Virus record (IMG/VR): IMGVR_UViG_3300028558_000791
Location: 186,001-250,000 of that record
Length of the DNA stretch: 64,000 nucleotides
Reading direction: 5' to 3' (one strand)
Shown one piece after another: positions 6,339 to 60,294 of the stretch. The notes under the pieces are model-generated. The model was given only the letters and a program-made list of their open reading frames with translations, was not told the DNA's origin and made no database searches. Made by a program: the position numbers and the translations under genes. Position 1 is the stretch's first letter. Every line of letters begins with the position of its first letter.

Positions 6339-6358
6339 AGGTTAAAAGTGTTTTCTAG

Positions 6359-6730
6359 ATGAAAGATCAGAATAGACGAAGTAAGAGGAACTACAAAAAG
6401 GCACCGAAGGGAGGTGAAACGCAGCCAGTCGTCGTCAACGACAAATTCGCACATATTGAAGCAGTGCAAGCCCAACCCCTCGAAGTTAAAGTGTATGGGA
6501 ACAATTTCGATAAAGCTCTTAGAGCTTTTCGAGCCTTAGTGCAGAAAGAAAGGGTTCTTTCGTCATATAAGGAAAAGCAGTCGTACGAGAAACCGTCCGA
6601 TAAACGTAGGAGAAAGCGCAACGAATCCGTAAGGAAACAACTTGAACTCTGTAGCAAAGGTGACTGTAGACATACAGAACACGCCAAGAATCGCAAAGAG
6701 CGCAAGTTTAAGCGTAACTCCTCAGAATAA
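6359..6730 (+). CDS. rpsU: Ribosomal protein bS21 with N- and C-terminal extensions
   Basis: EVKVYGNNFDKALRAFRALVQKERVLSSYKEKQSYEKPSDKRRRKRNES matches the bS21 pattern (V.V....F.KAL+.F+......G+L.......+Y.KPS.+R++K). Confidence 0.88.
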   Translation: MKDQNRRSKRNYKKAPKGGETQPVVVNDKFAHIEAVQAQPLEVKVYGNNFDKALRAFRALVQKERVLSSYKEKQSYEKPSDKRRRKRNESVRKQLELCSKGDCRHTEHAKNRKERKFKRNSSE

Positions 6731-35224: not shown

Positions 35225-35239
35225 AATTTATTAAGAAAT

Positions 35240-35304
35240 TTCCATCTTTCCCTTATTGATATATTGTGATTGTGTCTTTCAGTATCTAGGGGTAAAAGAT
35301 GGAA
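35240..35304 (+). promoter_or_regulatory. Hairpin burying the SD and ATG of the sigma-like gene, with TGATATAT in its loop
   Basis: ttccatcttt (35240-49) pairs perfectly with aaagatggaa (35295-304, contains the ATG); ccctta pairs with tagggg after a 2-nt bulge; box at 35257-35264. Confidence 0.8.
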
Positions 35305-35739
35305 CGCAGAAAAAACAGATCAGATAAGTATCAGTGGGTATTACTCGAAACAGTTTGTTCAAACGATATGATGGAGGCATTTTGCAATGAGGATAGTATC
35401 TCTGCAAGGCTCAATCCGTTTGACTACAACGAGGACCTAATCGAGCTAGAAGAGCAGCTCAAGAAAGAATTTTGGAGAGTCGTAGATACCCTATTGACCC
35501 CAAGACAAAGAGAAGTCATTCGACTTTATGCAGACGGCTATACTCAAATGGAGATTGCCAAGATGCTAAATGTCAACCAAAGTTCAATAACGAAAAGTTT
35601 GAACGGAAATGTAGACTATAAGAACGGAAAGAAAATCTACGGTGGCGCTCGTAAAAAGATCAGAAAGATTATCGAAAATGATGAGAAGATCAAGGATATT
35701 CTGAAAAAGATGAGTGACGCAAGAGACGAAAAATGGTGA
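35299..35739 (+). CDS. Sigma-70 region 4-like HTH protein
   Basis: LLTPRQREVIRLYADGYTQMEIAKMLNVNQSSITKSL...ARKKIRK; no recognisable region 2. Confidence 0.8.
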   Translation: MERRKNRSDKYQWVLLETVCSNDMMEAFCNEDSISARLNPFDYNEDLIELEEQLKKEFWRVVDTLLTPRQREVIRLYADGYTQMEIAKMLNVNQSSITKSLNGNVDYKNGKKIYGGARKKIRKIIENDEKIKDILKKMSDARDEKW

Positions 35740-46822: not shown

Positions 46823-46836
46823 GTGCTTTGCACTTA
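46820..46836. terminator. Short palindrome joining two convergent stop codons; possible bidirectional terminator
   Basis: taagtgc-ttt-gcactta: 7-bp stem whose arms contain both stop codons. Confidence 0.35.
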
Positions 46837-47385
46837 CCCAGCCTGTTTTTCAGGTTCTGGCGGGTATTTTTCAGTCCATAGCTTGCTATACTTACAGTTA
46901 TAGCACAACACCTCTTTGTCTTTGCTAAGAGTTAGCGTTTCTACTCTATCACTTTTGCATTCTTTGCAGCATCCACCATAGCATTCAACAATTTTTCTTC
47001 TGTATGCCTCAGCATATTTGCTTTTGAACGGCTTATTCTTATTACAGTTGTAGCAAATCACTTTGTGACCACTCTTCTGAACAATATTGTCATACAGATA
47101 GTTAATGTCACCATTGATTGTTAACTTAGTATATTCATCTTCACCACAGTTACAGCAAGCATTACCATAAGCAAGAATGACGGCGCTTCGTTTCATACGA
47201 TAGCGCCCGTTTTGTTTTTTAGAGTAATCCACATCAGACTGATGAGACTTCTTGTCAGCCTTTTTGCGACATGGCTTGCAGATATAATAGCCTTTATTTT
47301 GGTCGTAAGTATGCCAATTTTTGAGGGTTAATGAAATGCCACATTTGAGGCATGCCTTTTTTCTTCGTTTTTTCGTGGAAGGCAT
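46834..47385 (-). CDS. Cys-rich protein with two degenerate HNH-like repeats
   Basis: AYGNACCNCGE..KLTI...VICYNCN and CYGGCCKEC...TLTL...VLCYNCK; N-terminal CLKC, CKPC. Confidence 0.65.
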   Translation of the reverse strand: MPSTKKRRKKACLKCGISLTLKNWHTYDQNKGYYICKPCRKKADKKSHQSDVDYSKKQNGRYRMKRSAVILAYGNACCNCGEDEYTKLTINGDINYLYDNIVQKSGHKVICYNCNKNKPFKSKYAEAYRRKIVECYGGCCKECKSDRVETLTLSKDKEVLCYNCKYSKLWTEKYPPEPEKQAG

Positions 47386-47411: not shown

Positions 47412-49295
47412 ATGCCAAGTCTACATATTGAAAATAAAGAAATGTTCGAGAAGATGAAGAAGCAACTTGCAATGCTTGACCCTGTAACTTTTTGCGAGTC
47501 CAATTTAACATTGGAAGGAGAGCCATTCAAACTAAGTGGTAATGGATATAAGCCGTTCTCAGATATCTATAGATACATCGGAATCAAAGCATTAGAGCCA
47601 GATGCAAAACCAGTTATCTTAGTTAAGGGACGTCAGGTAGGAGCCACTACGATGGCCAGCGCCCTAGAAATGTACTTCATGGGTTCTGGATTATTTGGTG
47701 ATGGATTCCGTCCACCAATCCGTATCATTCATGCATTCCCTCAATTGGAATTAGCTGCCGCTTATTCAAAGACCAAGCTTCAGCAAATGATTAGTCAGGC
47801 TAAGATTCCCGAAGGAACTCCAGAAAACAAGGCTTCCCGCCCAAAGTCTTTCATGCAGCAATTGCTTGATCAGTCATCTCCAACTAATGACTCTTTGCAC
47901 TTCAAACAGTTTATTGGCGGAAACCATTTGTGGGTTGAGTCAACTGGTATTGATGCCGACAGAATCATGGGTCGTACCGCTGACATTCTATTCTTTGACG
48001 AAGTCCAGAAGACTACCAGCCAAGCCATCGGAAACGCGCTCAAGATTCTAACCAACGCTAAGTATGGTAGACCAACTAAGGGCGTACAAGTTTTCTTTGG
48101 AACGCCTCGTCGTAAGGGATCTGATTACCACAAGATGTGGCAGTCATCTTCTCAACAGTATTACTATTTAGGATGTGAGAGCTGTAAAGAACATTTCCCA
48201 CTATATACTCCAGGATCTGATGATTGGGAGAAAGTTTGGATTCACGGTAAAGTTGTTAAGTGCTCTAAGTGCGGACATGAACAAGATAAGCTACAAGCAC
48301 AGGAACGTGGTAAATGGGTAGCCTTTAAGAATCCAAATGACCCAGACTGTGATATGATTGGCTTTCATATTAATCAGCTTTACATGCCTAAATTCACACG
48401 AGAAGATATCGATAAGGAAAAGCCGGGCCGTCATCCAATCAATACGGAACGTGTTTTTCAAAACGAAGTTCTTGGAGAGTTTTACCAGGGCGATGCAAGT
48501 CCATTGTCTCCAGATGAAGTTCGCACCATGTGCGCTGACTTCGAGAGAAAGTTTAGCCCACGTATTCTTCCATCAAAAGGTATTAACCAATATTTTACTG
48601 TACTTGGAATCGATTATGGCGCTCGTTCCGACTTGGAGCAATTGGCCGATCCAGAAAGAGTTAAGCCGGCAGGACAGTCATACAGCACGGCTGTTGTTCT
48701 ACAAACTAAGGGCGCTCAATTGTTATCAATCGAGTTTGCTACCAAGTTCAAGCGTAATGACGTTGAAAGTAAAAAAGGAATCATTGATCAACTGATGAGA
48801 CAATATAGTATTCAGTTGGCGGTCGGAGACATTGGTTACTCCAATGACTTCTCTTCTATGTTGCATAACACGTATGGAGATAGGTATTTAGTTTCTCGTG
48901 CCCATAATAAGATTAATGACCATGTCAAATTCAATCATGAAGCATTTCCAAAAGAAATCATTTTTGAAAGAGACTTCTACATTACTGAACTTTATGATCA
49001 GATGAAGAAGGGGATGATTAGATTTCCATTTGGAGATTATGAAAAGATAGCCTGGTTGATTGAACACAGTTGCAGTATGGAACTAAAGCCATCTATTTCT
49101 AAATATGGAGATCATACAGTTCATTATGTGAAAGGTGGAACTCCAAACGACGGGTTTATGGCATTGTTGAATGCCTATTTAGCCTTTAAGTTCTTGGTAA
49201 GTAGAGGATTTACAAATAATAATCCGGCTAATCATACAGCCAAAAACCTAACCAAACCCATGGTAATGTCTGGTTATGTGCCCAGGAAGTTCTAA
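47412..49295 (+). CDS. terL: Terminase large subunit
   Basis: VILVKGRQVGATT, LFFDEVQ, FGTP, zinc module CESC...CSKC, GFHINQL, NEVLGE, nuclease LGIDYG, DIGY, DGFMA. Confidence 0.92.
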   Translation: MPSLHIENKEMFEKMKKQLAMLDPVTFCESNLTLEGEPFKLSGNGYKPFSDIYRYIGIKALEPDAKPVILVKGRQVGATTMASALEMYFMGSGLFGDGFRPPIRIIHAFPQLELAAAYSKTKLQQMISQAKIPEGTPENKASRPKSFMQQLLDQSSPTNDSLHFKQFIGGNHLWVESTGIDADRIMGRTADILFFDEVQKTTSQAIGNALKILTNAKYGRPTKGVQVFFGTPRRKGSDYHKMWQSSSQQYYYLGCESCKEHFPLYTPGSDDWEKVWIHGKVVKCSKCGHEQDKLQAQERGKWVAFKNPNDPDCDMIGFHINQLYMPKFTREDIDKEKPGRHPINTERVFQNEVLGEFYQGDASPLSPDEVRTMCADFERKFSPRILPSKGINQYFTVLGIDYGARSDLEQLADPERVKPAGQSYSTAVVLQTKGAQLLSIEFATKFKRNDVESKKGIIDQLMRQYSIQLAVGDIGYSNDFSSMLHNTYGDRYLVSRAHNKINDHVKFNHEAFPKEIIFERDFYITELYDQMKKGMIRFPFGDYEKIAWLIEHSCSMELKPSISKYGDHTVHYVKGGTPNDGFMALLNAYLAFKFLVSRGFTNNNPANHTAKNLTKPMVMSGYVPRKF

Positions 49296-49319
49296 AGTAG
49301 TCTAAATACCGAGGTTTAC

Positions 49320-49327
49320 TGATATAT
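49320..49327 (+). promoter_or_regulatory. TGATATAT promoter-like box upstream of the portal gene
   Basis: Intergenic; lies between tctaaat (49301-07) and atttaga (49331-37). Confidence 0.55.
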
Positions 49328-49375
49328 CACATTTAGAGTATTAGGTAGAGGGTATAGTGGAACAACAGAGGTTAC

Positions 49376-51253
49376 ATGGCTGGTATTAAAAAATCAGGTT
49401 TAGGGGAGGCTCCTTCCTTTTCAGCGAGATTCTTGGAAGGTAGATCCACTACCCCACAGGTCAGCGCCATTATGGCTCATGGCGTTTCAGGAGAGAGAAG
49501 AGTTATTCTTTCTGATGAAGTAGACCAAGGCTATTTTCGCGATGGCTCAGGCCCTAATTACAATAAGATGGCGTTAGCTAACGCCCCTACAAATGCTTCT
49601 AACGTAGTTTCATCTACTGGCGTAAAGAAATATGGACAGGCAGTTAGCAGTTCTGGTGGTATGTTTCGCGGTATTCATGGCGATACTGTCAAGCAAACCC
49701 CTGAAGTTTATTCGCCATTGTGGCTGAACAGCAACTTAAATCTTCCCCGCGACCGTGCAACTATTAATGCATGGTGTCGTAGCTTTTTCGCATTGAATCC
49801 ATTCGTGCACAATGCAATCAGTTTGCATAGCACTTATCCAATTAGCAAGCTTTCTATCAAATGTCCTAACAAGGATATTGAAAAGTTCTTCGATGATATG
49901 ATTGAAGAAATTGACCTAATGAATATCTGTATTCAAATCGCCCAAGAGTATTGGCTCTTAGGAGAAGCGTTTGTTTATGCAGAACTGGATGAAGGTAAAG
50001 GTAAGTGGAGTCGCCTACACATTCAAAATCCAGACTTCATGATTGTCAAACGTACGGTCGTAGCCAGCGAACCAATCATCATGCTTCGTCCTGATGAGAA
50101 TCTCAAGAAGATCATTTTCTCTAATCGTCCAACCGATATTGAACAGCGTAAGCAGCTTAACCAGCACATTATCGATTCTGTCAGACGCGGAGAAAACATT
50201 CCACTAGACAACTTCCACGTATCACATTTGGCCCGTAGAATTAGTCCTTACGAAATTAGAGGTACTGGACTTCCAGTCTGTATTTTCCGTCAGTTGATGC
50301 TTTTCGACAAGCTTCGTGAATCCAAGTACGCCCAGTCCGATAATATGATTAACCCATTGACTTTGGTCAAGATTGGTTCGGCCGATTACAAGCCAACCTT
50401 CGCTGACCTTGAAGCATGGAGAGGCGTATTCGAAGAAGCCCAGTACGACAAGGACTTTAAGATTTTCACTCATGAAGGTGTTGCCGTTGAAAGAGTTGGT
50501 TGGGGACAGGGTATCTATGATATCTCTGGAGACATCACTCAACTTATTAAGGAAATCTTCGTTGGTATGTTCGTTCCACCAGTAATGATGGATGGTGGTG
50601 ATACAACTACTTATGCTAACGGATCTGTAGCTCTTGACGTTCTTCGTCAGAGATACATGCAGTTTCGCAATATGATGTCCCAATGGTTGAAGACCAAGAT
50701 TTTCGCCCCAATCTCTAAGATTCAAGGGTTCTACGACTACTCTGGTGGTGAAAAGCAACTCATTGTTCCAGAAATTGATTGGAACCATATGTCTTTGTTT
50801 GATGCAGACACTTACATCAATAGCTTGGTAACTCTATCTCAGGGACAGGCTGACCAGAAGAGAGTCTCCGTTCATACTTTGTATCGTTCATTGGGTCTTG
50901 AGTATGAAGACGAAGTACGCAAGATGCGTAAAGAAAATGTTCAGAATGCAATCTCCAAGAAGGAAATGGCAGCTCTAGAATCTATGGACCTCAATGCACT
51001 ACGTGCCCTGGATGACCAGGATGAAATTCCAGAGCCAAAACAACCGGGTGCAGGTCAAGAGCAACCACTACCAGGCGAAACTCCAGGTGGAGCCCCTCCA
51101 GGCGGTGGAATGCCGGATCTTGGTGGCCTACCAGGCGGACCTCCTCCACCACCTCCACCAGCAGGTGGCCCTCCACCCCCTCCGAGTGGCGCTTCAGCGG
51201 GTCTTCCTCCACCAGGTGGCGGAGCCCCTCCAGGTCCACCTCCAGCCGGATAA
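49376..51253 (+). CDS. Portal protein with Pro/Gly-rich C-terminal tail
   Basis: Directly after TerL; NPFVHNAISLH, EYWLLGEAFVY, LHIQNPD, SPYEIRGTG, IFVGMFVP, LRQRY; about 75-aa PG tail. Confidence 0.85.
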   Translation: MAGIKKSGLGEAPSFSARFLEGRSTTPQVSAIMAHGVSGERRVILSDEVDQGYFRDGSGPNYNKMALANAPTNASNVVSSTGVKKYGQAVSSSGGMFRGIHGDTVKQTPEVYSPLWLNSNLNLPRDRATINAWCRSFFALNPFVHNAISLHSTYPISKLSIKCPNKDIEKFFDDMIEEIDLMNICIQIAQEYWLLGEAFVYAELDEGKGKWSRLHIQNPDFMIVKRTVVASEPIIMLRPDENLKKIIFSNRPTDIEQRKQLNQHIIDSVRRGENIPLDNFHVSHLARRISPYEIRGTGLPVCIFRQLMLFDKLRESKYAQSDNMINPLTLVKIGSADYKPTFADLEAWRGVFEEAQYDKDFKIFTHEGVAVERVGWGQGIYDISGDITQLIKEIFVGMFVPPVMMDGGDTTTYANGSVALDVLRQRYMQFRNMMSQWLKTKIFAPISKIQGFYDYSGGEKQLIVPEIDWNHMSLFDADTYINSLVTLSQGQADQKRVSVHTLYRSLGLEYEDEVRKMRKENVQNAISKKEMAALESMDLNALRALDDQDEIPEPKQPGAGQEQPLPGETPGGAPPGGGMPDLGGLPGGPPPPPPPAGGPPPPPSGASAGLPPPGGGAPPGPPPAG

Positions 51254-51272
51254 TGTTTTAAATCCGCCGAAT

Positions 51273-51330
51273 AACCCCTACTTGTGAATAATCACGCATT
51301 GTTTTAGCTATTGCGCACAAGTAGAGGGTT
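51273..51330 (+). promoter_or_regulatory. 14-bp hairpin (one bulge) covering the SD of gene 51334
   Basis: aacccctacttgtg (51273-86) / cacaagtag-a-gggtt (51316-30); 29-nt loop. Confidence 0.75.
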
Positions 51331-51333
51331 TCC

Positions 51334-52569
51334 ATGGATAAATTAGCTCAAAGTAAAAGACAAACAGGTCGTGGTTTTTTCAACGAATTGCGTGAAAAGA
51401 TCAATGCTCCTGGTGCTTTCGTAGAAGGTATATTCAAACCCGAATTAAATAGGGTTATGGAATCCTTAAAAGCACTAGATGACCGTGTTCGTTCAGAATT
51501 AACCGGCAAACAAATTGGCAGTGCCACAGAGCCAGCCATCAAAGAGTCTGCTAAGAAGCTCTTGAGTGACTCTAGAGGTCTTTTCAATCGTCGTGAATAT
51601 ATGTCCGGCGTTTCTGATTTGGCCATGTTTCATAAAAAGCTTCAGGCTATTGTTAATGACATTGATAAGTTCTTTGTTGATGTGAATAAAATTCATCACA
51701 AGTTCTTATTTGATGGAGTTAAGGAAGATAAAATCAACAGACTTCGTGAACACATGGAGCCTAAAGCTGCGTCTTTAATCGCCGATCAACTTCTCAAGGA
51801 AGCTGGCCTTGTTGACTCTCTATTGAATTTCTTTACAACTCGTGGTCGTGGACTTGCTGCTTGGGAAAAGAAGTATCCTAAGGAAATTAAGGCACTTCGT
51901 GATGGTGGCTTCAAGCTGCTAGATCAAGCTGATTCAGTACTAGCTTCCACTATCTCTGTTATGAAAGATATGGCAACTGCTAGAGCTACTCGTAGACCAG
52001 ATGATTATATGGATTATGCCAATAAGATTAAGCAGGACTTCAACAAGTTTGATGCTGCATTTAAATCTTATTATCAAAATGCTGTAATGCCTTGGATGAG
52101 AATCAAGGATCAGATGGAAGCAGAATTAGCAAAGCAGCAAGCTGCGCAACAATCAAGCAATCCAAATGTAGGAAAAACTGAATTAGGTACAGACCCTACA
52201 GTACCGCCAACACCAGGTGGTCCACCTAGTGGTCCTTCAGGTGGATCTCCTATTCCTCCAATGGGTGGTGGTTTTATTAACCCACATCCAGGTGCACCAC
52301 CAGTTCCAGTTGCGGCACCTCCAGTTGAGGAAGCCGCTCCAGATACTCTTCCAGGCGGCTACCAGCCAGAGGCTAAGGTTCGTATTGCCCCAGAGCCACC
52401 CAAGGTCAGAGTTGCTCATGAACAATTCTATAAATCACTTGAGGCCATGGCCGGAGAAGATCCTCGCGTTCTGTGTGGTTACATTGCTAAATATGCTAAA
52501 TCTATTCAAGGAGATGACCCAGAGACTGCTATTTCGCTATTTTCAATCGTCAAGAAACTAAAGGAGTAA
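51334..52569 (+). CDS. Hypothetical helical protein with Pro-rich segment, probably head-associated
   Basis: 411 aa; starts MDKLAQ. Confidence 0.8.
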   Translation: MDKLAQSKRQTGRGFFNELREKINAPGAFVEGIFKPELNRVMESLKALDDRVRSELTGKQIGSATEPAIKESAKKLLSDSRGLFNRREYMSGVSDLAMFHKKLQAIVNDIDKFFVDVNKIHHKFLFDGVKEDKINRLREHMEPKAASLIADQLLKEAGLVDSLLNFFTTRGRGLAAWEKKYPKEIKALRDGGFKLLDQADSVLASTISVMKDMATARATRRPDDYMDYANKIKQDFNKFDAAFKSYYQNAVMPWMRIKDQMEAELAKQQAAQQSSNPNVGKTELGTDPTVPPTPGGPPSGPSGGSPIPPMGGGFINPHPGAPPVPVAAPPVEEAAPDTLPGGYQPEAKVRIAPEPPKVRVAHEQFYKSLEAMAGEDPRVLCGYIAKYAKSIQGDDPETAISLFSIVKKLKE

Positions 52570-52570
52570 T

Positions 52571-53719
52571 ATGCCAGTCAGGGGTAAAGCCAACCTTGGA
52601 CCAAATTTCTATCCGAAATTGGTCCAGATATCCGAAGAATTGGGGATGAAACCAGAAGACCTTCTGGCTGTCATGACCTCAGAGTCTGGCTTGAATCCAT
52701 CAGCATATGAAGAAACATACAAAGGATCTGGTTTAATTGGATTTATGCCAGATACTTTGAGGGGCCTTGGCTATAAAGGCACTTGGCAAGACTTTACCAA
52801 ACTAACTGGCGAAGAGCAACTTGATTGGGTCAAGAAATTCATTCAAGGTAAAAATGGATTGATGGGTAATCGTAAGTTTACATCTGCCGGATTGTACTAT
52901 ACTGGTAACTTATGGCCTATTGCTCTAAAACTTCCTGGTGTAATTAAAGGCGATCCTAGTACTCGTATTCTAGAATCAGATCCAGAAACGGATGCAAGCG
53001 GTAAGTATAGTAAGAAGTATTTTGATCTTGGATACAAGATTAGCAAAAGTTTTGAAAGCAAAGCATATAAAGCAAATCCTCTTTTTGATCGTGATAAAAA
53101 AGGATACATCACTTATGGTGATATGATTAAGCAGACTGAGATTAACAGAAAGAATCCTGTTTATCAAAAGGCAATTGCGGAAATGGCTAAGAGCACCGGC
53201 TATCAACCTGGAAAATCAATCAACCCATCTATGCTCGCACAAAAAAATAATACACAGTCACCTTCATCGCTACAAGGAATGGATGGCATCATGGATAAAT
53301 ATATACAGGAGTTGCAGGTGGCTGCCACGTCTTATGACTTAAAGAAGTTATACAAGCGTGCCTTACCAACTCATGACGTCCTGATTCAAATTTCTGCACC
53401 AGACTATTCTAGCGCAATAGAATTCTCTCGCGTATTGACTGCGGCTTTAGACGAAGATTTACTATCATCATCTTATCCATATACAGATGGTCATCAAGTG
53501 GAAATTGAATGTTCCATCTCAGGACCAGAGAAAGAATGTTTCGCCGCAGTTCAACAGATGACCAATGCTGTAGCTGAGGCTTTCAAAGATGCAACTGCAA
53601 AAATTGGTGGTATTGCTATTAAAACCCAGCAATTTACCAATAAGAAGTCATCTTATCAACCAATCAGCCCTAGAACTGCTGATACTAACTACAGGAAGTT
53701 CCTGCTCAAATTCATCTAA
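52571..53719 (+). CDS. Lytic transglycosylase/lysozyme-like protein with additional C-terminal domain
   Basis: EELGMKPEDLLAVMTSESGLNPSA...GSGLIGFMPDT matches SLT motifs I and II. Confidence 0.8.
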   Translation: MPVRGKANLGPNFYPKLVQISEELGMKPEDLLAVMTSESGLNPSAYEETYKGSGLIGFMPDTLRGLGYKGTWQDFTKLTGEEQLDWVKKFIQGKNGLMGNRKFTSAGLYYTGNLWPIALKLPGVIKGDPSTRILESDPETDASGKYSKKYFDLGYKISKSFESKAYKANPLFDRDKKGYITYGDMIKQTEINRKNPVYQKAIAEMAKSTGYQPGKSINPSMLAQKNNTQSPSSLQGMDGIMDKYIQELQVAATSYDLKKLYKRALPTHDVLIQISAPDYSSAIEFSRVLTAALDEDLLSSSYPYTDGHQVEIECSISGPEKECFAAVQQMTNAVAEAFKDATAKIGGIAIKTQQFTNKKSSYQPISPRTADTNYRKFLLKFI

Positions 53720-53730
53720 GGAATAGCAAA

Positions 53731-54135
53731 ATGGTATCGGAAAAACAACTTTTGGACACAATTCAGCAGCTTCAAGGTTCAGGCAAAACATTTGCTGAGT
53801 TCCTGGCAGAGATTTTTAAAGATAAATTCATCGAAGTTTATGTTGGAGATTCTTATGAAGATGTAAGTACAGAACAAATCTCAACAACATATCCTGCTGT
53901 ATTTTGTGGTAAAGTTGTTGCTGCATATCGTGAATGTTTAATTCTTAGTTGCGCTTATGTTAATGGTAAGCACTTAACAATGGGCAATATGATGTTCGTT
54001 AATGAAAGAGCTATTAGAGCTTTGAATGAAGTGGATGGTAAAGGTACACTAGAAGATATGATGCTTCGTAGTAAAGAGACTTTGGATATTAAAGCGACCT
54101 TTGGGTCTGTAGAAAAGCCTGATACAAAGAAATGA
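53731..54135 (+). CDS. Hypothetical protein
   Basis: 134 aa, SD AAGGA. Confidence 0.75.
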   Translation: MVSEKQLLDTIQQLQGSGKTFAEFLAEIFKDKFIEVYVGDSYEDVSTEQISTTYPAVFCGKVVAAYRECLILSCAYVNGKHLTMGNMMFVNERAIRALNEVDGKGTLEDMMLRSKETLDIKATFGSVEKPDTKK

Positions 54136-54884
54136 TCAACACCGACACGCTGCTACAACTTGCTAGTACTTATGAAGATAAGTGTTTACAGGATTTGGTA
54201 AAGGTCGCGAAAATTCGCGAATTACCAGACGGTAGCTATCGTGTGCTCTCTGAAAAGGGAAAAGAACTAGGTTCCTATAAATCTAGGAAAGGCGCAGAAA
54301 AACGTCTTCGTCAAATAGAGTTCTTCAAACACTTGGACAAATCAAAGGCTGATGATCAAGGCAATCCAATGAAGCCAATTGACTTATCTAAAGCGGATGA
54401 GTTTAGTTATTCTGCTTTGATGAGGGCGTTACGTCAACAAGCCACTCCTGAACAAGTAATTACATTTCTTAAGATTTTCAAACTACAATTCGATAGAGCG
54501 GTTAAGGGTAAAATCAATAAGCCAGAACGAGTCGCTTTACAGAATGCGGTTATCAAATTCCATAAGATTCACCCAATCAAATTAGATAAGAAGATGGTTA
54601 AGTTTGCTGCTGTTGCAGAACTTGGAAATGCTGATCAAGTTGGAACATATTTATCCGGTATTGTTAGGTTCATTCTTAATAGATTGCCACAGGATAAAAG
54701 ACCAAGGGCTACTGAGATTCTCAAGCAGAAATTTAACGTTATGAGTGAGAATGAGATTTCTGGTAAGAACATGCCAAACGCCGCTGTTTACGGTCAAGCC
54801 ATTACATTCGTTAAACACGTACTGTTCAATCAGGACGCCAGCTATGTAAGGGAAGTTCTTAACAGCCTATCGAGGAATCTATGA
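54132..54884 (+). CDS. Hypothetical protein with basic IRELPDGSYRV...LGSYKSRKGAEKRLRQIEFFK module
   Basis: 250 aa, ATGA coupling. Confidence 0.75.
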   Translation: MINTDTLLQLASTYEDKCLQDLVKVAKIRELPDGSYRVLSEKGKELGSYKSRKGAEKRLRQIEFFKHLDKSKADDQGNPMKPIDLSKADEFSYSALMRALRQQATPEQVITFLKIFKLQFDRAVKGKINKPERVALQNAVIKFHKIHPIKLDKKMVKFAAVAELGNADQVGTYLSGIVRFILNRLPQDKRPRATEILKQKFNVMSENEISGKNMPNAAVYGQAITFVKHVLFNQDASYVREVLNSLSRNL

Positions 54885-55651
54885 TTAGAAGATTCCGAGC
54901 TGTAATTCCAGGGGTTCTGTATCGTGGCTCCGGCCCCACTCCACAAGACGTTCTCGAATTACAAGATAAATTAGGGATCAAAAAGATTGTCTCTTTAGAC
55001 CAAGAGATTGGTGAGAAAATTGATCGCGCTTGTCAAATGTTAGGTATCAATCATATCAAATTGTATATTGATCATACTAGAAAGAGTTTGTATGATTTTT
55101 TATCTCAGGATATGAAAAAACTCTTTCTAGAGGGTGGGCCAACATTTGTTCATTGCCATGAGGGTAAGGATAGAACTGGATTGGCCTGCGCTATAGTAGA
55201 ATGTAAATTCCTTGGTAAAGATCCCGAGAAAGCTATTCAAGAGGCAAAGGCTTTAGGGTTTGGTGTTGGCATAGCTCCTCAAACTACTCAGCAGTTTGAG
55301 CGTATCATTCGTCACTGCAAGCCCGATAAGGATACTAATAGTGCTGATATAGTCTCTAATGAACGAGAGTATATTGGTGATAATCGTGATAGTTTCTTGG
55401 ATGAGGGACATCAAGGATCGTTCTCTCCATACCTATCTCAGACTAAGCAAGACCCAGTGGATTCATTATACCCATCTACACTAGACCAATACCCAACTCG
55501 TCAAAATTATGATAGTCCACCATTATTCCGGCATGATCCTAGTGAGAGTGTCACATTACCTAATGTAGGGGAATATGACAACGATGCTGGTCAACGAGGT
55601 TTTGGGCCAGTGGAACGCATGGATGGTTTCTTCTCAGAGGTAGGTCATTGA
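54881..55651 (+). CDS. Cys-dependent tyrosine/dual-specificity phosphatase with acidic tail
   Basis: LYRGSGP, IKKIVSL, P-loop FVHCHEGKDRTG (CX5R). Confidence 0.9.
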   Translation: MIRRFRAVIPGVLYRGSGPTPQDVLELQDKLGIKKIVSLDQEIGEKIDRACQMLGINHIKLYIDHTRKSLYDFLSQDMKKLFLEGGPTFVHCHEGKDRTGLACAIVECKFLGKDPEKAIQEAKALGFGVGIAPQTTQQFERIIRHCKPDKDTNSADIVSNEREYIGDNRDSFLDEGHQGSFSPYLSQTKQDPVDSLYPSTLDQYPTRQNYDSPPLFRHDPSESVTLPNVGEYDNDAGQRGFGPVERMDGFFSEVGH

Positions 55652-56302
55652 ATGATTAAAAAGTCTTATTCCGTACAAATGAGCTATGATGTGTCTGACA
55701 GCGAAAAGCAGCAGGCAGAGAAAGCGCTATTGTATTTTAAGGCTGCTGAAAGATTCTTAATGCAATCTTCTGATCATTTGAATATTATGAAGACTCCATT
55801 TAAGGATAATCCAGATATGACGCCTGAAGATGTTATGAAGGCTCGTGCCGTCATTAGACGTTTCAGAGATAAAGCTATTGATAATTTTGACCAATTCAAA
55901 AAAGTAGCTTTTGATTGCGTTAATCTTATGCAGACTTTTGAAAGCGACACTCAAACTCTCAAACTAATGAAATCATTCATTGCTGCTATTGATGATTTGG
56001 AAGTTAGTGTTAATCAATTCTCAGAATTATTTAATGATTTGCACTCAAAAGACTTCGTCAAAAACGTAGTAACTTTCATTGAGAGTATCCAAAAGCAATG
56101 CGATGAGATTGATGAAATTATTGACGAAAGAATCAAGTCCCATATTCAAACCAATATATTGGCTAGTAGTTGGGTTGACTCAGTTAGCAATGATTTACAA
56201 ATGAAAATAGAGAAAAAGACACCATTAATCGTCGATCTCTATAATCAAAGACAAGAGCAGCTAAATGATGCTGTAGAGGAAAGGATGCCATCAGGGAAAT
56301 GA
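55652..56302 (+). CDS. Hypothetical coiled-coil protein
   Basis: 216 aa; DDLEV motif. Confidence 0.75.
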   Translation: MIKKSYSVQMSYDVSDSEKQQAEKALLYFKAAERFLMQSSDHLNIMKTPFKDNPDMTPEDVMKARAVIRRFRDKAIDNFDQFKKVAFDCVNLMQTFESDTQTLKLMKSFIAAIDDLEVSVNQFSELFNDLHSKDFVKNVVTFIESIQKQCDEIDEIIDERIKSHIQTNILASSWVDSVSNDLQMKIEKKTPLIVDLYNQRQEQLNDAVEERMPSGK

Positions 56303-56404
56303 AAATGGTAATATCGCTGTATATTAGATGAAGTTTTCGGTCGTAGATCGGAAAATTGTAGCAATATTACATTATACCTGTGTGGTCTCCCAATTGGAGA
56401 GTTT

Positions 56405-56560
56405 ATGTTCATTAAACACGGTGATGGAAAAATACTAGACGTTGTTGACGGAGAAGAGCTAACTGACGCTCAGAAGAAAGCTGTCAAAGATCGTTCTAAA
56501 GACCTCGTCAAACAATCTGACGATTCAACTGATTCTTCCAAGAAGAAGTCAGGGAGCTAA
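56405..56560 (+). CDS. Unlisted 51-aa protein
   Basis: SD GGAGA; MFIKHGDGKILDVVDGEELTDAQKKAVKDRSKDLVKQSDDSTDSSKKKSGS; ends 5 nt before the protease gene. Confidence 0.7.
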   Translation: MFIKHGDGKILDVVDGEELTDAQKKAVKDRSKDLVKQSDDSTDSSKKKSGS

Positions 56561-56565
56561 AACGA

Positions 56566-59500
56566 ATGCCCATTATTAAACTAGGCGAAGCCCACGAAAT
56601 TAAACTGGAGAACATGGAGTCATGTCTTCCTGAAGTGAGTGCTGAGGTCTTAGATAACTTTAGGAAGTTTGCAACCAATCTAAAGAAGATTGCTCCTAAA
56701 GCTGAAGACTTCCTCTATTTCTCTGCTGTTATGATGCATGCTGCTGAAGCATCTGCGCTTAACGAAGATGGTACACCAAAGCTAACCCTCAAAGGCGAAC
56801 CAGTCCAAGTAGGATGGGATACTAGTGGTGGTACATGGAAATGGGCATCTAATGACCCTAACATTAAGCCATATAAGAATTCTAATGGAGACATATTTCC
56901 AGAAGCAGAATTAACCAAAGCTTACAAGAAGTGGAAGCACAAGCCTCTATGCGTGGATCATAAATCGAGTTCGGTTGACCATGTTAGAGGTTTTATCGTT
57001 GATACTTATTACGACCGCTCACTCAAGAGAGTGATTGCATTGTGCGCCTTAGATAAGGCCGGATTCCCTCAATTAGCTAGACAAATTTCAACAGGCGTTT
57101 CTAACTGTGTATCCATGGGTACAGCAGTAGGAAGAGCCATCTGTTATGACTGCGGTAGAGTCGCTCGTGCTGAGCAAGACTTCTGCGCTCATATGAAGAA
57201 CAAGACTTGCTACGGTGAAATCAACGTAGACCTCAATCCAATTGAGTTATCTATCGTTGTAAATGGTGCAGACCCTAGAGCCAACATCAAACACATCATC
57301 GCCGCAGCAAACACAATGAACACTTACCTAGAGAATCGCGCTAAGGAACTAGAAAAAATAGCCGACCTCAAGTTTAGTGCTCAATTCAGTGTGTCAGATC
57401 TTAATGGTGACGAAGGTGGAGGAAGTGCTCAATTTAATGTTGATGCTACTGACATTAACCAGTTCAAGAGCGAATTAGACGAAGCATTCCGCAAAGTCCA
57501 AGAGTTCAAGAATGTAAAAATTTCTGAAAAAGATACTAATTCTACAGCATCTAATCAGACGTCGGGTTCGATCGCCATGGATGAAGGTGCACCCACGGAT
57601 TCTGGATTGGCTCTCCAAACTCCGCAAGCCATTAGGCTTGCATCCGCTGATGTAGAGGCGGAATCATTGGCTGAGCTTCAGCAAGTAACTGCATCAATTG
57701 AAGCTACGTTAGGTCAAATGAAGAAGAGCTTGGATAAGTTAGCAAAAACTTCTACTACTAAAAAACAAGAGGAAAACATGTCTGGATCAAAAGAAATCAA
57801 TAAGCAAGCTTATTTCCAGGGTGGCGGTGGCGTTAATGAACCAACTCCAGGCCAAGTTAAATATCCAAAGGACGGTCTTAACGAGCAACTTCGTGAACAC
57901 GAAGATAAGCACATGACCGGTCAACCACCTTTCCCTGAGGTTGGTCCAGTGGATGGAATGCATCCTTCTCCAGCTTCGGCTGATCCTTCTGACGAGCTTG
58001 CTCGTAAGAAGATGCTCGCTAGAGCAGAAGCAGAAGAGCGTGCCCTCAAGCGTAACGCCATTGTCAATATGGCCAAGGACGCATTGAAGAGCAAGGAAGC
58101 TTACTACCTCGGTGGTGGCGGTGTAAACGAGCCAACTCCAGGTAAAGTAAAGTATCCAAAAGACAAGCTCAACGAAGAGCTACGTGACTACGAAGATAAG
58201 CACATGGTTGGACAGCCTCCATTCCCAGGTGTTGGTCCAGTCGACGGCATGCACCCTTCTCCATCATCTGCTGATCCAAAGGATGAATTGAAGCGTAAGC
58301 AAATGCTCGCTCGTGCACAACTACGTGCCAGATTTGTCAAGGCCGCTAACAGTAACGGCACTCAGAACAGAGCCAGAAGCGCTTGGGAAGTATTCCTTGG
58401 TGACAAGCTATTGTTGACCGCATCTGTTGACGAACTCTCCGGTGGAAACACTGACGTTCTATATGACTCAATTGCTACTAAGGACTTCGGAGCCAAGTTG
58501 ATCGAAAAGGTCAAAGTTCAAGGCGCTGATGCAGTAAGCAAGCTAATTAAGAAAGCCCAAGGCGCTCCAGGCGCACCACCAGCCGGCCCTCCAGCAGGTG
58601 ATCCATCCAGTGCTCCACCTCCAGGCGGTGACATGGGTGCAGGCGCTCCAGATGCTGGTCCTCCAGCAGAAGACGCAGGCAAGTCTGGTGACCCAAAGCA
58701 AAGCGCAGTAGAACTCGCTGAGAAGGTAAGAGACCTAAGCTCTGACCTAGTAGAAGCAGTTCGTGCCCTAACCGGTGAACAAGCCGAAATGGGTGGCGCA
58801 GGCCCAGCACCAGATGCAGGTGGAGTTGGTGGCCCAGCCGGTGGTCCAATGGCCGCTGATGACCAGGATGCAAAGAAGAAGAAAGACTCTATGGAGTCCT
58901 CTGCTAACTTTAGCACCTCAACTCTCAACACCTTGAGAAAAGAATTGAATGGCGCACTTACTCATGCAATGAAGGAAGCTATTGCAGAGCTAACCGAACA
59001 CCAGCAAGAATTAGACATGATTGCCGGTATGTACGACAAGGGTGCTGTAACTCAATCTAACCAAGACTTTGTTGGAACTATCGTAGAAGACGCATTGAGC
59101 GAAGCTAAGACTGCTGTTGCAGACGGCTTTAAGCTAATGACCGCCTTCGTCAAGTATGCTCGTGGTACCAAGGCAATTGTCAAGCGTGCTGAGATTGAAT
59201 CAGAACTTGAATCACTAGCCGATGGAGACACTATGAGCGACAAGAAGGACAGTCACTCCGCAGACGGCGGTGACTTGATGGGACTAATTAATGACACCAA
59301 TGCAGACTTGGACGCAGTTCAAGAGATGATGGGTGACGACCAGGATCACGATCTTGGCGGTGAACTTGATGGCGATGGCCTAGCTGGACTCTTTGAAGAG
59401 GGTGGCGAAGGTGAAGAACATGGTCACGAGGAACCACTATTCGAAGGTTTGGCTGACGACAACGATCTCACTTTTGAACAAGGTGAGAAAGTACCACCAG

Positions 59501-60294
59501 AGTTGGCCGGAAAGAAGTTAACTATGGCATCATTTGATGATAGAGCAGGCCGTGCAGCTCTCAGGGCCAAGTTGGCTGCTGACGCTCTCGGAAAAGAAGA
59601 CGACGGAGAAGTTCAGGATATGTCCAAGCAAAAGTGGAGCGATATGCTAGATGCTGCTGACAAGCACTCTGACGGTCAAACCGAATTGGACGTCAAGCCA
59701 TCCGACAGCCTCGGATTGGTTGAGACCCTACCAGAAGTAAACAAGGCCATGATGGACGTTGCTAAAGCTCCACCAAAGGTTCGTAAGGAAGCAGAAGTAA
59801 TTCAGAGATTAGTTTCTGAAGGCAAGCTTGATCCAAATGATGTTGATGCACTCGCATCTTACGGATTGGATAAAGAAGCCGTTGCTTACTGGAAGAAGTA
59901 CTTCGGTGAAGTTGATGGTGGCAGTGAATTCGCCAGTGAGATGGTGAAGGAACATGTCAAGGCAGCTATGGAAGAAGAACTAAACACCTTCAGAGTCAAG
60001 CTAGCCCGTGCTTACGAACTAACTTACGATATGGTTGACCGTGGCCTATGCCGTCACGACAGAGTCACCATCTCTGATCAAGTTGACCAGATTATGAGAT
60101 TTAACGATGATGCATTCGAATCCTTGAAGAAGGTCGTTGCCCGTCATGAACCAGGTAATCTACGCAAGTCTGCTGGCGCAATGCCACAGGTTGGTCTCAG
60201 AGTTGACGGAGAATTCTCTCCAGCTCAAGCAGTCGAGGATGACTCTTATACCCAATTGTCAAGCCTCTTTGGTAACAAAAAGGGTGTGTTCTAA
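56566..60294 (+). CDS. Prohead protease-scaffold polyprotein, 1242 aa
   Basis: N-terminal NSNGDIFPEAEL..AY..W..KPLCVDH...VRGFIVD...VSMG...CYDCG...CAH...PIELSIVVNGADPRA resembles herpes-fold phage maturation proteases with a zinc insert; long repeat, acidic and helical C-terminal part; lies after portal. Confidence 0.75.
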   Translation: MPIIKLGEAHEIKLENMESCLPEVSAEVLDNFRKFATNLKKIAPKAEDFLYFSAVMMHAAEASALNEDGTPKLTLKGEPVQVGWDTSGGTWKWASNDPNIKPYKNSNGDIFPEAELTKAYKKWKHKPLCVDHKSSSVDHVRGFIVDTYYDRSLKRVIALCALDKAGFPQLARQISTGVSNCVSMGTAVGRAICYDCGRVARAEQDFCAHMKNKTCYGEINVDLNPIELSIVVNGADPRANIKHIIAAANTMNTYLENRAKELEKIADLKFSAQFSVSDLNGDEGGGSAQFNVDATDINQFKSELDEAFRKVQEFKNVKISEKDTNSTASNQTSGSIAMDEGAPTDSGLALQTPQAIRLASADVEAESLAELQQVTASIEATLGQMKKSLDKLAKTSTTKKQEENMSGSKEINKQAYFQGGGGVNEPTPGQVKYPKDGLNEQLREHEDKHMTGQPPFPEVGPVDGMHPSPASADPSDELARKKMLARAEAEERALKRNAIVNMAKDALKSKEAYYLGGGGVNEPTPGKVKYPKDKLNEELRDYEDKHMVGQPPFPGVGPVDGMHPSPSSADPKDELKRKQMLARAQLRARFVKAANSNGTQNRARSAWEVFLGDKLLLTASVDELSGGNTDVLYDSIATKDFGAKLIEKVKVQGADAVSKLIKKAQGAPGAPPAGPPAGDPSSAPPPGGDMGAGAPDAGPPAEDAGKSGDPKQSAVELAEKVRDLSSDLVEAVRALTGEQAEMGGAGPAPDAGGVGGPAGGPMAADDQDAKKKKDSMESSANFSTSTLNTLRKELNGALTHAMKEAIAELTEHQQELDMIAGMYDKGAVTQSNQDFVGTIVEDALSEAKTAVADGFKLMTAFVKYARGTKAIVKRAEIESELESLADGDTMSDKKDSHSADGGDLMGLINDTNADLDAVQEMMGDDQDHDLGGELDGDGLAGLFEEGGEGEEHGHEEPLFEGLADDNDLTFEQGEKVPPELAGKKLTMASFDDRAGRAALRAKLAADALGKEDDGEVQDMSKQKWSDMLDAADKHSDGQTELDVKPSDSLGLVETLPEVNKAMMDVAKAPPKVRKEAEVIQRLVSEGKLDPNDVDALASYGLDKEAVAYWKKYFGEVDGGSEFASEMVKEHVKAAMEEELNTFRVKLARAYELTYDMVDRGLCRHDRVTISDQVDQIMRFNDDAFESLKKVVARHEPGNLRKSAGAMPQVGLRVDGEFSPAQAVEDDSYTQLSSLFGNKKGVF
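57802..58317 (+). repeat. Two 225-nt (75-aa) direct repeats in the scaffold region
   Basis: 57802-58026 KQAYFQGGGGVNEPTPG...KKMLARA and 58093-58317 KEAYYLGGGGVNEPTPG...KQMLARA; many synonymous differences. Confidence 0.95.

What the first reader, a model, noticed from the sequence alone, without database searches (positions are those of the whole stretch)
51273..51330. Second strong SD-occluding hairpin, directly after the portal gene
Fourteen base pairs with a single bulged A cover the AGAGGG SD of gene 51334. The 29-nt loop (aataatcacgcattgttttagctattgcg) lacks TGATATAT, so a different promoter, an RNase site or a protein may open it. This would uncouple the downstream genes (transglycosylase, phosphatase) from terL-portal read-through.
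Basis: partly seen in the sequence, partly recalled or inferred. Interest (0 to 1): 0.6.

Follow-up and report, generated by a model that had tools for sequence, protein, structure and literature searches.

The report
RBS-hiding hairpin around a promoter-like motif

Summary
Window 51273-51330 forms a 14-bp stem with one bulged A (51325) and a 29-nt loop, covering the AGAGGG Shine-Dalgarno of gene 51334. It folds far better than shuffles (z about -4.7, 0/200). Its cost to open the ribosome-binding site ranks 4th of 597 gene starts in the 481-kb genome.

The new result concerns the loop. Straddling the junction of the 5' arm and the loop is ACTTGTG-AATAAT-N3-GCATTGTTTTA (51280-51306). The same block sits at the same place in 59 distinct related jumbo-phage contigs, even where the flanking proteins are only 30-40% identical. 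It has the block pattern of a sigma-70-type -10 element plus start site. The full motif is single-copy per genome. Its core, ATAAT-N3-GYAT, is about 8-fold enriched upstream of genes.

The stem arms covary. Strong SD occlusion occurs in 17 of 59 relatives, in at least 5 separate lineages.

A transcript starting in the loop would lack the 5' arm: the computed opening cost falls from 15.5 to 2.6 kcal/mol.

Best reading (about 0.5): a T4 gene e / I-TevI-type arrangement that ties translation of the six-gene cassette 51334-56302 to its own promoter. No RNA data exist, so the start site and the translational effect are inferred.

The parts
49376..51253 (+). Portal gene. Its mRNA would read into the hairpin.
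   Evidence: PHROG portal families, E = 1e-49. 33% identity to Bacillus phage G portal gp14. No terminator-like site between it and the hairpin.
51262..51271 (+). Outer 5' pairing segments: AUCCG 51262-66 and GAA 51269-71. They extend the helix to the AUG in the window's own clade.
   Evidence: MFE structure. These outer pairs are seen in the folds of the window and its closest relatives; the segment is poorly conserved family-wide (upstream spacer identity 0.35).
51273..51286 (+). 5' arm of the hairpin. It contains the anti-SD CCCC(T) and the ACTTGTG block.
   Evidence: Pair counts on 59 relatives: 71.8% of cells paired against 33-52% for slid controls, and 12 of 15 pairs with double changes.
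51280..51292 (+). Promoter-like upstream block plus -10-like element: ACTTGTG + AATAAT. ATAAT is 51288-51292.
   Evidence: ATAAT is invariant or at least 90% conserved in 59 distinct relatives. Mean pairwise identity is 0.75 and 0.87, against 0.35 for the upstream spacer.
51293..51295 (+). Unconserved 3-nt spacer (discriminator-like).
   Evidence: Mean pairwise identity 0.33.
51296..51306 (+). Conserved GCATTGTTTTA block. The predicted transcription start is about A51298 (A and T invariant).
   Evidence: identity 0.74. No covariation supports an apical helix here. The start site is inferred, not mapped.
51287..51315 (+). 29-nt loop of the hairpin.
51316..51330 (+). 3' arm of the hairpin, including SD AGAGGG (51323-51328) and the bulged A51325.
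51334..52569 (+). Regulated first gene: a 411-aa protein of unknown function. It is all-alpha with long helices, a Pro-rich disordered linker and a small C-terminal helical domain.
   Evidence: No Pfam or PHROG hit. AF2 model with pLDDT 75. No informative fold match. Its position after the portal gene is conserved in 71 loci.
52571..56302 (+). Five tightly packed downstream genes: SLT-domain protein, 134 aa, 250 aa, PTP phosphatase, 216 aa. With 51334 they form a six-gene cassette with abutting or overlapping stops and starts.
   Evidence: ORF coordinates. Pfam SLT and phosphatase hits. The next intergenic gap is 56303-56565.

Best explanation
This is a promoter-in-hairpin translational gate of the phage T4 gene e / I-TevI type.

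RNA that reads through from the portal gene contains both arms. It folds into the 51273-51330 hairpin, extended to the AUG by outer pairs, which buries the Shine-Dalgarno of gene 51334.

A sigma-70-family -10-like promoter element, ACTTGTG-AATAAT-N3-GCAT (51280-51299), straddles the junction of the 5' arm and the loop. RNA polymerase, host core with host or phage sigma, would start at about A51298, inside the loop. Those transcripts lack the 5' arm and have an open ribosome-binding site.

Translation of gene 51334, and by translational coupling the packed cassette to 56302, is therefore tied to firing of this dedicated promoter and insulated from terL/portal transcripts.

Shown: the hairpin, its statistical strength, its conservation with compensatory changes, the conserved motif and its promoter-like block pattern, and the computed accessibility difference. 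Inferred: that the motif is a promoter, the start site, the existence of read-through RNA, and the effect on translation.
For: Hairpin strength: z = -4.66. RBS-opening cost ranks 4 of 597 in the genome.

Accessibility: opening -14..+3 costs 15.5-15.8 kcal/mol in read-through RNA and 2.6-2.8 in RNA starting at 51296-51300.

Motif conservation: in 71 syntenic loci and 59 distinct sequences, the spacer carries aCTTrTG-nATAAT-N3-GyATTrTTTTA at a fixed 45-49 nt from the ATG. The flanking proteins are down to 30-40% identical.

Block pattern: identities run 0.75 / 0.87 / 0.33 / 0.74, as for -10 region, discriminator and start site. The apical region is conserved as sequence and not as a helix.

Pairing state: ATAAT is paired in some relatives' folds and unpaired in others, yet it is invariant. 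This fits recognition as DNA.

Core motif: ATAAT-N3-GYAT is enriched in gene-upstream regions of this genome, 7 observed against 0.91 expected, p = 5e-5. The enrichment is spacing-specific: N2 gives 0 of 5 and N4 gives 2 of 12.

Polymerase: the phage encodes a sigma-70 region-2 protein. No Rpb2-type RNAP subunit was detected; the T7-type family search was uninformative because its control detected nothing. This fits sigma-type promoters on host polymerase.

Arms covary: each 5' arm pairs better with its own 3' arm than with the 3' arms of other relatives, -12.9 against -9.7 kcal/mol, z = -8, 0 of 10000 permutations. 71.8% of cells are paired against 33-52% when slid. For example, pair 26-66 is AU 30 / GC 13. 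L049 has a perfect 22-bp stem with a different sequence.

Distribution: strong occlusion (at least 9 kcal/mol difference) occurs in 17 of 59 relatives, in at least 5 places on the portal tree.

Read-through: no canonical terminator lies between the portal gene and the hairpin.

Precedent: T4 e, soc, 49, I-TevI, segB and Aeh1 mobE (PMC3014915, PMC2988022).
Against: No transcript data exist. All sequencing runs holding this DNA are DNA runs.

The motif is not a textbook promoter. TG sits at -14/-13, one base closer than in a canonical extended -10. There is no -35 (my reading of the sequence). The -12 position is variable.

The full 29-nt motif is single-copy in this genome (38.5 bits against 19.9 for the next best) and in three related genomes. 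This is unlike a general promoter class and suggests an extra, specific function.

Only 17 of 59 relatives occlude the SD strongly, and in 25 the difference is under 3 kcal/mol. Occlusion is therefore not the family-wide constraint.

RNAalifold found no consensus structure on the MAFFT alignment. The G-U versus A-C count does not show on which strand or in which molecule the pairing acts.

The upstream genes (terL, portal) are themselves structural genes, so the biological reason for blocking read-through translation is unclear.
Confidence: 0.5

Rival explanations
1. Operon insulator. The hairpin plus the following U-rich spacer acts mainly as an inefficient intrinsic terminator, or a 3'-end stabiliser, for the terL-portal transcript. 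The embedded promoter re-starts transcription. SD occlusion would then be secondary.
For: The stem is followed by UUU in the window and by 4-7 U in relatives with the longest stems, such as L013, L049 and L053. In L049 an inner mini-stem makes an almost continuous hairpin of about 30 bp.
Against: The loop is 29 nt and only 3 U follow in the window. The terminator scan did not call this site. This genome's clear terminators have short loops and long T runs, for example upstream of the TGATATAT at window 32593. The U-rich SD-AUG spacer is also present in relatives with weak stems. Several relatives lack any U tract, for example L037 and L042.
Confidence: 0.12
2. RNA operator. The conserved single-copy block is displayed on the hairpin and bound by a phage protein that represses or activates translation of gene 51334. 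One example would be autogenous control of a scaffold-like product, as for the P22 scaffolding protein whose gene also follows the portal gene.
For: The motif is single-copy per genome and more extended than a -10 element. The 411-aa product is all-alpha with a disordered Pro-rich linker and a small C-terminal helical domain, which is a scaffold-like architecture. Translational autoregulation of P22 scaffold is described in bioRxiv 10.1101/2022.12.13.520362.
Against: No covariation supports an apical helix presenting the motif. The motif's pairing state varies between relatives while its sequence is invariant. The 3-nt unconserved gap and the ATAAT core fit DNA recognition by sigma. The function of the 411-aa protein is unknown, and no fold or family match was found.
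Confidence: 0.15
3. RNA processing site. RNase III cuts the extended helix, or RNase E/Y cuts the AU-rich loop. This separates portal mRNA from downstream mRNA and frees the SD.
For: In the window clade the helix totals about 22 bp with internal loops, which resembles T7 intercistronic RNase III sites (from general knowledge). The loop is U-rich and predicted mostly single-stranded.
Against: The outer helix segments lie in a poorly conserved part of the spacer (identity 0.35-0.40). Many relatives have stems of 6-9 bp, too short for RNase III. A cut in the loop would leave the two arms annealed. Nothing explains the invariant ATAAT.
Confidence: 0.08
4. DNA-level site unrelated to translation. 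The inverted repeat and motif are a regulator operator, a qut-like polymerase-modification site, or a packaging or other recognition site. The RNA hairpin would be a by-product.
For: It is single-copy, strongly conserved, and lies near the packaging genes. The G-U versus A-C count cannot assign the pairing to RNA.
Against: Arms that differ in sequence but stay complementary (L049, L053, L064, L041) indicate base pairing, not protein half-sites. The strict distance and orientation relative to the ATG and SD (45-49 nt) fit expression control. The 3' arm is the SD itself.
Confidence: 0.07

Closest known systems
Phage T4 gene e (lysozyme) leader; likewise soc, 49, I-TevI/II/III, segB, and Aeh1 mobE
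   Same: A hairpin sequesters the SD/AUG in long transcripts from upstream promoters. A promoter lies in or next to the DNA encoding the 5' arm, so promoter-proximal transcripts lack that arm and are translated (PMC3014915, PMC2988022). The computed behaviour here is the same.
   Different: The T4 promoters are the many-copy gp55 late motif TATAAATA. Here the motif is a single-copy, longer, -10-like block. The upstream genes here are structural (terL, portal), not early genes. The start site is unmapped. The phage is an unrelated uncultivated jumbo phage with a portal like that of Bacillus phage G.
Aeromonas phage 25 seg43(25) hairpin
   Same: In about half of the relatives the conserved short stem ends immediately upstream of the SD without covering it. 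The same is described for seg43(25) (PMC2988022).
   Different: In the window itself the SD is fully inside the stem.
Sigma-70-type extended -10 / Gram-positive TRTGn-TATAAT promoters
   Same: The ATAAT core has invariant A(-11) and T(-7) equivalents. A TRTG block lies upstream, there is no -35, and a purine start candidate lies 5-6 nt downstream.
   Different: TRTG abuts the hexamer with no intervening base. The -12 position is variable. An 11-nt conserved block follows the start site.
Lambda PR'-qut late promoter / P22 scaffold autoregulation
   Same: A single-copy regulatory site at the head of a morphogenesis gene block. In P22, the regulated gene directly follows the portal gene.
   Different: There is no evidence here for an antiterminator or for RNA binding by the product. 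These are resemblances in logic only.
Phage T7 intercistronic RNase III sites
   Same: An intercistronic hairpin of about 22 bp with internal loops between late genes (general knowledge).
   Different: The lower helix lies in a poorly conserved part of the spacer. There is no cleavage evidence.

Membership tests
T4-type promoter-in-hairpin translational gate | Stable RNA helix that includes the SD and/or AUG of the regulated gene | tested here: met
   14-bp stem over AGAGGG plus outer pairs to the AUG; z = -4.66; rank 4 of 597. This is in silico only.
T4-type promoter-in-hairpin translational gate | Promoter placed so that its transcripts start downstream of the 5' arm | tested here: inconclusive
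   A conserved -10-like motif lies at 51287-51292, with invariant A51298 and T51299 downstream of it. The core is enriched upstream of genes. No 5' ends are available.
T4-type promoter-in-hairpin translational gate | Longer transcripts from upstream promoters run through the region | not testable with these tools
   Only indirect evidence: same strand, an 80-nt gap, and no terminator-like site after the portal gene.
T4-type promoter-in-hairpin translational gate | Translation is low from long RNA and high from promoter-proximal RNA | not testable with these tools
   Computed opening energies are 15.5 against 2.6 kcal/mol. No experiment has been done.
Intrinsic (Rho-independent) terminator | GC-rich stem, short loop (3-8 nt), run of at least 5 U directly after the stem | tested here: not met
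   Loop of 29 nt followed by UUUCC. Not called by the scan.
Canonical extended -10 sigma-70 promoter | TGn at -15 to -13 followed by TATAAT | tested here: not met
   TG is at -14/-13 relative to the ATAAT-defined hexamer. The hexamer is AATAAT in the window, and -12 is variable in the family. It may still work like a -10-only promoter with another sigma.
General promoter class of this phage (TGATATAT) | Contains TGATATAT, the 8-mer enriched 11-fold upstream of genes | tested here: not met
   Absent from 51254-51333. Enrichment of TGATATAT: 13 observed against 1.15 expected.
Any Rfam family | Covariance-model match | tested here: not met
   No hit at gathering thresholds in the window. Only chance-level hits at E up to 10 in 51150-51450.
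RNase III processing site | About 20 bp or more of mostly continuous dsRNA, conserved | tested here: inconclusive
   About 22 bp with two internal loops and a bulge in the window. The lower helix lies in a poorly conserved part of the spacer, and many relatives have stems under 10 bp.

The most novel reading that the evidence does not exclude
The single-copy conserved block of about 30 nt (51280-51310) is more than a promoter. It would be a dedicated switch of a new kind that marks the boundary between packaging genes and a head-internal/assembly cassette in a large family of uncultivated soil jumbo phages. Possible forms are a loading or antitermination site for a phage factor, or an RNA operator for autogenous control of a scaffold-like protein. 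In this reading the lineage-variable SD-occluding stem tunes how leaky the switch is.
Probability: 0.2. Interest if true: 0.65.

Novelty: new member of a known kind. Interest (0 to 1): 0.45.

Why it matters
If right, the classic T4 device of hiding a ribosome-binding site from read-through RNA and exposing it only on the gene's own transcripts has been adopted independently in an unrelated family of giant soil phages. It also appears to have been gained or lost several times within that family.

It gives an unusually clean, conserved, single-copy cis-element as an entry point to the unknown transcription programme of these uncultivated phages: 59 natural variants, including natural compensatory mutants.

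It also defines a six-gene cassette (unknown all-alpha protein, transglycosylase, phosphatase and others) as a separately controlled expression unit.

For annotation, it warns that operon membership inferred from gene packing can be wrong at the level of translation.

Tried and rejected
- **Phage database, DNA level.** Megablast of the locus against GenBank phages found no match. Only remote protein similarity of the portal was found, to Bacillus phage G and cluster C mycobacteriophages.
- **Bacillus phage G.** It has only a 26-nt portal-gp15 spacer, no motif, and gp15 is not detectably related. The element is therefore not that old.
- **Rfam.** Nothing at gathering or permissive thresholds.
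- **RNA evidence.** No RNA run holds the locus. Read laying on DNA contigs only confirmed the sequence.
- **RNAalifold.** No consensus structure on the MAFFT alignment. I used a named-structure pair count and an alignment-free test (own arm pairs against mismatched arm pairs) instead.
- **G-U versus A-C test** for the strand or molecule of pairing: not significant.
- **Apical/inner helix** (ATAAT with ATTR, GYA with UAC): invariant or unpaired, with no covariation. Rejected as the reason for motif conservation.
- **General promoter class.** The idea that the full motif is one was rejected, because it is single-copy here and in related genomes.
- **General habit at TGATATAT promoters.** Of the 10 sites folded, only one (G000 82351) shows a large computed effect. 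The portal-upstream site differs by only 1.7 kcal/mol.
- **Function of the 411-aa protein.** Pfam, PHROGs, ESM Atlas, an AF2 model, and Foldseek against PDB and BFVD gave nothing informative. 'Scaffold-like' rests on architecture and gene position only.
- **Phage-encoded RNA polymerases.** No Rpb2-type match. The T7-type family search was uninformative because its control detected nothing anywhere.

Full report
**Context.** The window is bases 186001-250000 of a 480,838-bp IMG/VR virus record. It came from a rhizosphere metagenome. It has no close relative among deposited phages. Its portal is 33% identical to gp14 of Bacillus phage G. Nearly all genes in the window are on the + strand. Around the finding lie:
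- terL, 47412-49295
- portal, 49376-51253
- a 411-aa protein of unknown function, 51334-52569
- an SLT-domain protein, 52571-53719
- three small genes and a PTP-type phosphatase, 54881-55651

The genes from 51334 to 56302 abut or overlap each other.

**Observation.**
- The 5' arm is 51273-51286 and the 3' arm is 51316-51330, giving 14 pairs with A51325 bulged.
- The loop is 29 nt, 51287-51315.
- The SD AGAGGG (51323-51328) lies inside the 3' arm, and the ATG is at 51334.
- Folding 51254-51345 gives -26.6 kcal/mol against -14.6 for dinucleotide shuffles, z = -4.66, 0 of 200 as good. The fold adds outer pairs that reach the AUG.
- I folded -75..+9 of 597 crudely called gene starts of the whole genome. 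The cost of freeing -16..+3 is 21.0 kcal/mol for this gene, rank 4. The median is 4.5 and the 99th percentile is 16.3. At least rank 1 looks like a mis-called start beside a terminator.
- A contig from a second sample carries the identical sequence.

The feature is real and far beyond chance.

**Relatives.** A portal-based scan of IMG/VR returned 312 related loci, of which 80 were kept. In 71 of them the portal gene is followed by a homologue of the 411-aa gene. The spacers are 45-97 nt, apart from one locus with a 498-nt insertion.

In 59 distinct sequences the consensus is aCTTrTG-nATAAT-N3-GyATTrTTTTA. ATAAT and the AT of GyAT are invariant or at least 90% conserved, and ATAAT lies 45-49 nt from the ATG. 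The neighbouring proteins fall to 30-40% identity in these same loci.

Mean pairwise identity by block:

| Block | Identity |
|---|---|
| Upstream spacer | 0.35 |
| ACTTRTG | 0.75 |
| nATAAT | 0.87 |
| 3-nt gap | 0.33 |
| GYATTRTTTTA | 0.74 |
| SD | 0.71 |

That pattern of two conserved blocks separated by a free 3-nt gap is what a -10 region, discriminator and start site would give. In the window the motif is ACTTGTG-AATAAT-CAC-GCATTGTTTTA (51280-51306). It overlaps the last seven bases of the 5' arm.

**Is the motif a promoter?**

For:
- The ATAAT core has the two positions that sigma-70-family factors read most strictly.
- A TRTG block lies just upstream.
- An invariant A lies 5 nt after the hexamer.
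- The core ATAAT-N3-GYAT is enriched in oriented gene-upstream regions of this genome: 7 observed against 0.91 expected, p = 5e-5. Spacings N2 and N4 are not enriched.
- The phage encodes a sigma-70 region-2 protein, and no Rpb2-type polymerase subunit was detected. The T7-type polymerase search was uninformative because its control detected nothing.
- The variable positions of the apical region do not covary. Its conservation is of sequence, not of an RNA helix.
- ATAAT is paired in some relatives' folds and unpaired in others without any change in sequence.

Against:
- TG is one base closer to the hexamer than in a canonical extended -10.
- There is no -35.
- The full motif is single-copy in this genome (38.5 bits against 19.9 for the runner-up, which lies in coding sequence). 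It is also single-copy in three related large genomes.
- The genome's common upstream 8-mer is a different one, TGATATAT (13 observed against 1.15 expected). A conserved copy of it sits before the portal gene across the family.

The element therefore looks like a promoter with additional, gene-specific information. The tools cannot show that it is one.

**Is the hairpin conserved?**
- RNAalifold found nothing on the MAFFT alignment.
- I projected the window's stem onto that alignment, which was not fitted to any structure. 71.8% of cells pair, against 33-52% when the 3' partners are slid and 67.7% in shuffles (0 of 500 as high). 12 of 15 pairs show double changes; for example, pair 26-66 is AU 30 / GC 13 / GU 5.
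- An alignment-free test folded each 5' arm against every 3' arm. A relative's own arm pair gives a mean of -12.9 kcal/mol, against -9.7 for arms taken from different relatives (z = -8, 0 of 10000 permutations). Relatedness inflates this somewhat.
- Independent examples with different arm sequences include L049 (a perfect 22-bp stem), L053, L064, L041, L045 and L026.
- The inner part of the stem (ACTTRTG with CAYAAGT) is paired in 70-95% of sequences. The outer, SD-covering part is paired in about 55-80%.
- A G-U versus A-C count could not show that the pairing acts in sense RNA. I infer this from gene orientation and from the 3' arm being the SD.

**Functional computation.**
- In the window, freeing -14..+3 costs 15.5-15.8 kcal/mol in RNA that starts in or before the portal stop. 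It costs 2.6-2.8 kcal/mol in RNA that starts at 51296-51300.
- Across the 59 relatives, the difference is at least 9 kcal/mol in 17, 3-9 in 17, and under 3 in 25. With shuffled 5' parts it never exceeds 5 (Wilcoxon p = 1e-4).
- On a portal tree, the strong state needs at least 5-7 changes. It occurs in the window's clade (10 of 12 members) and in four other places.

Strong SD occlusion is therefore a recurrent but labile addition to a universal promoter-like motif flanked by a short stem. In about half of the family the stem stops just before the SD.

**Mechanism.** The best-supported reading is the arrangement known from T4 genes e, soc and 49, the intron endonucleases, segB and Aeh1 mobE. 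Long upstream transcripts fold an RBS-sequestering hairpin. A promoter in the DNA encoding the 5' arm produces transcripts that cannot fold it and are translated (PMC3014915, PMC2988022). Here it would gate the six-gene cassette 51334-56302, whose packed stops and starts suggest translational coupling. I put this at about 0.5.

**Rivals.**
- A weak terminator or insulator with re-initiation. The loop is too long and the U tract too short in the window, and the scan did not call it.
- An RNA operator for a trans-acting protein. This is attractive because the motif is single-copy and the downstream product has a scaffold-like architecture, as in P22. It has no structural covariation behind it.
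- An RNase site.
- A DNA-level site.

**Gene 51334.** I could not identify it. It is all-alpha with three long helices, a disordered Pro-rich linker and a conserved C-terminal three-helix domain. It has no family or fold match.

**Verdict.** The kind of regulation is known, so this is a new member of a known kind. The open point is the single-copy, over-conserved nature of the motif. Everything about transcription and translation remains inference until 5' ends are mapped and stem mutants are tested.

Noticed in passing
G000:C1:419979-434000 and beyond (outside the window); a few scattered copies elsewhere: The decamer CTCCCATTCA (fuller form GGCTCCCATTCAC) occurs 60 times on the + strand and never on the - strand. 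Most copies are clustered from about 420 kb onward, many 25-40 nt upstream of the SD and ATG of short ORFs. It looks like a phage-specific promoter or leader class for a dense block of small genes.
   Followed up: partly
window 49296-49375 (terL-portal spacer): This spacer also carries a family-wide conserved element: cTGATATATcATATTTAGaGTATTAGTAGAGGGTATAGTGGAA...GAGG..ATG. The computed SD occlusion there is weak, 5.7 against 4.0 kcal/mol.
   Followed up: partly
window 9676, 11485, 25532, 32593, 35257, 35754, 49320; genome-wide: TGATATAT is the most enriched upstream 8-mer (13 observed against 1.15 expected; 20 copies on + and 4 on -). At window 9676 and 32593 it lies only 15-18 nt before the ATG with no SD, which suggests leaderless or near-leaderless mRNAs.
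   Followed up: partly
window 35239-35305; G000:C1:82330-82385: Two further hairpins have TGATATAT in the loop or 5' arm and pair with the SD or AUG. They rank 5 and 21 of 597 by MFE opening cost. With more downstream context, only the one at 82351 keeps a large effect, 13.7 kcal/mol.
   Followed up: partly
L039:about 5900-6400: One relative has a 498-nt insertion at the portal C-terminal region. It encodes a Cys-rich HNH-like ORF, followed again by a Pro-rich tail and then the conserved motif. It is probably a mobile endonuclease insertion.
   Followed up: no
window 46834-47385 (- strand): A lone minus-strand gene with weak HNH endonuclease similarity sits immediately upstream of terL.
   Followed up: no
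window 51100-51250: The portal protein ends in a long Pro/Gly-rich low-complexity tail that varies in length among relatives.
   Followed up: no
window 56566-60294: A 1242-aa protein has a head-maturation-protease-like segment at residues 105-213, so it may be a large fusion protein. A sigma-70-like site, AAGACA-18-TATAAT, lies at 56216-56245 in the 263-nt gap upstream.
   Followed up: no
G000:C1:343480-343587: The phage encodes a sigma-70 region-2 protein in a 214-aa open frame. No Rpb2-type RNA polymerase subunit was detected; the T7-type search was uninformative because its control detected nothing.
   Followed up: partly
window 51334-52569: The 411-aa protein after the portal gene is all-alpha. 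It has a Pro-rich disordered linker (about residues 282-356) and a conserved C-terminal three-helix domain (363-410). This is a scaffold-like architecture, but no family or fold match was found.
   Followed up: yes
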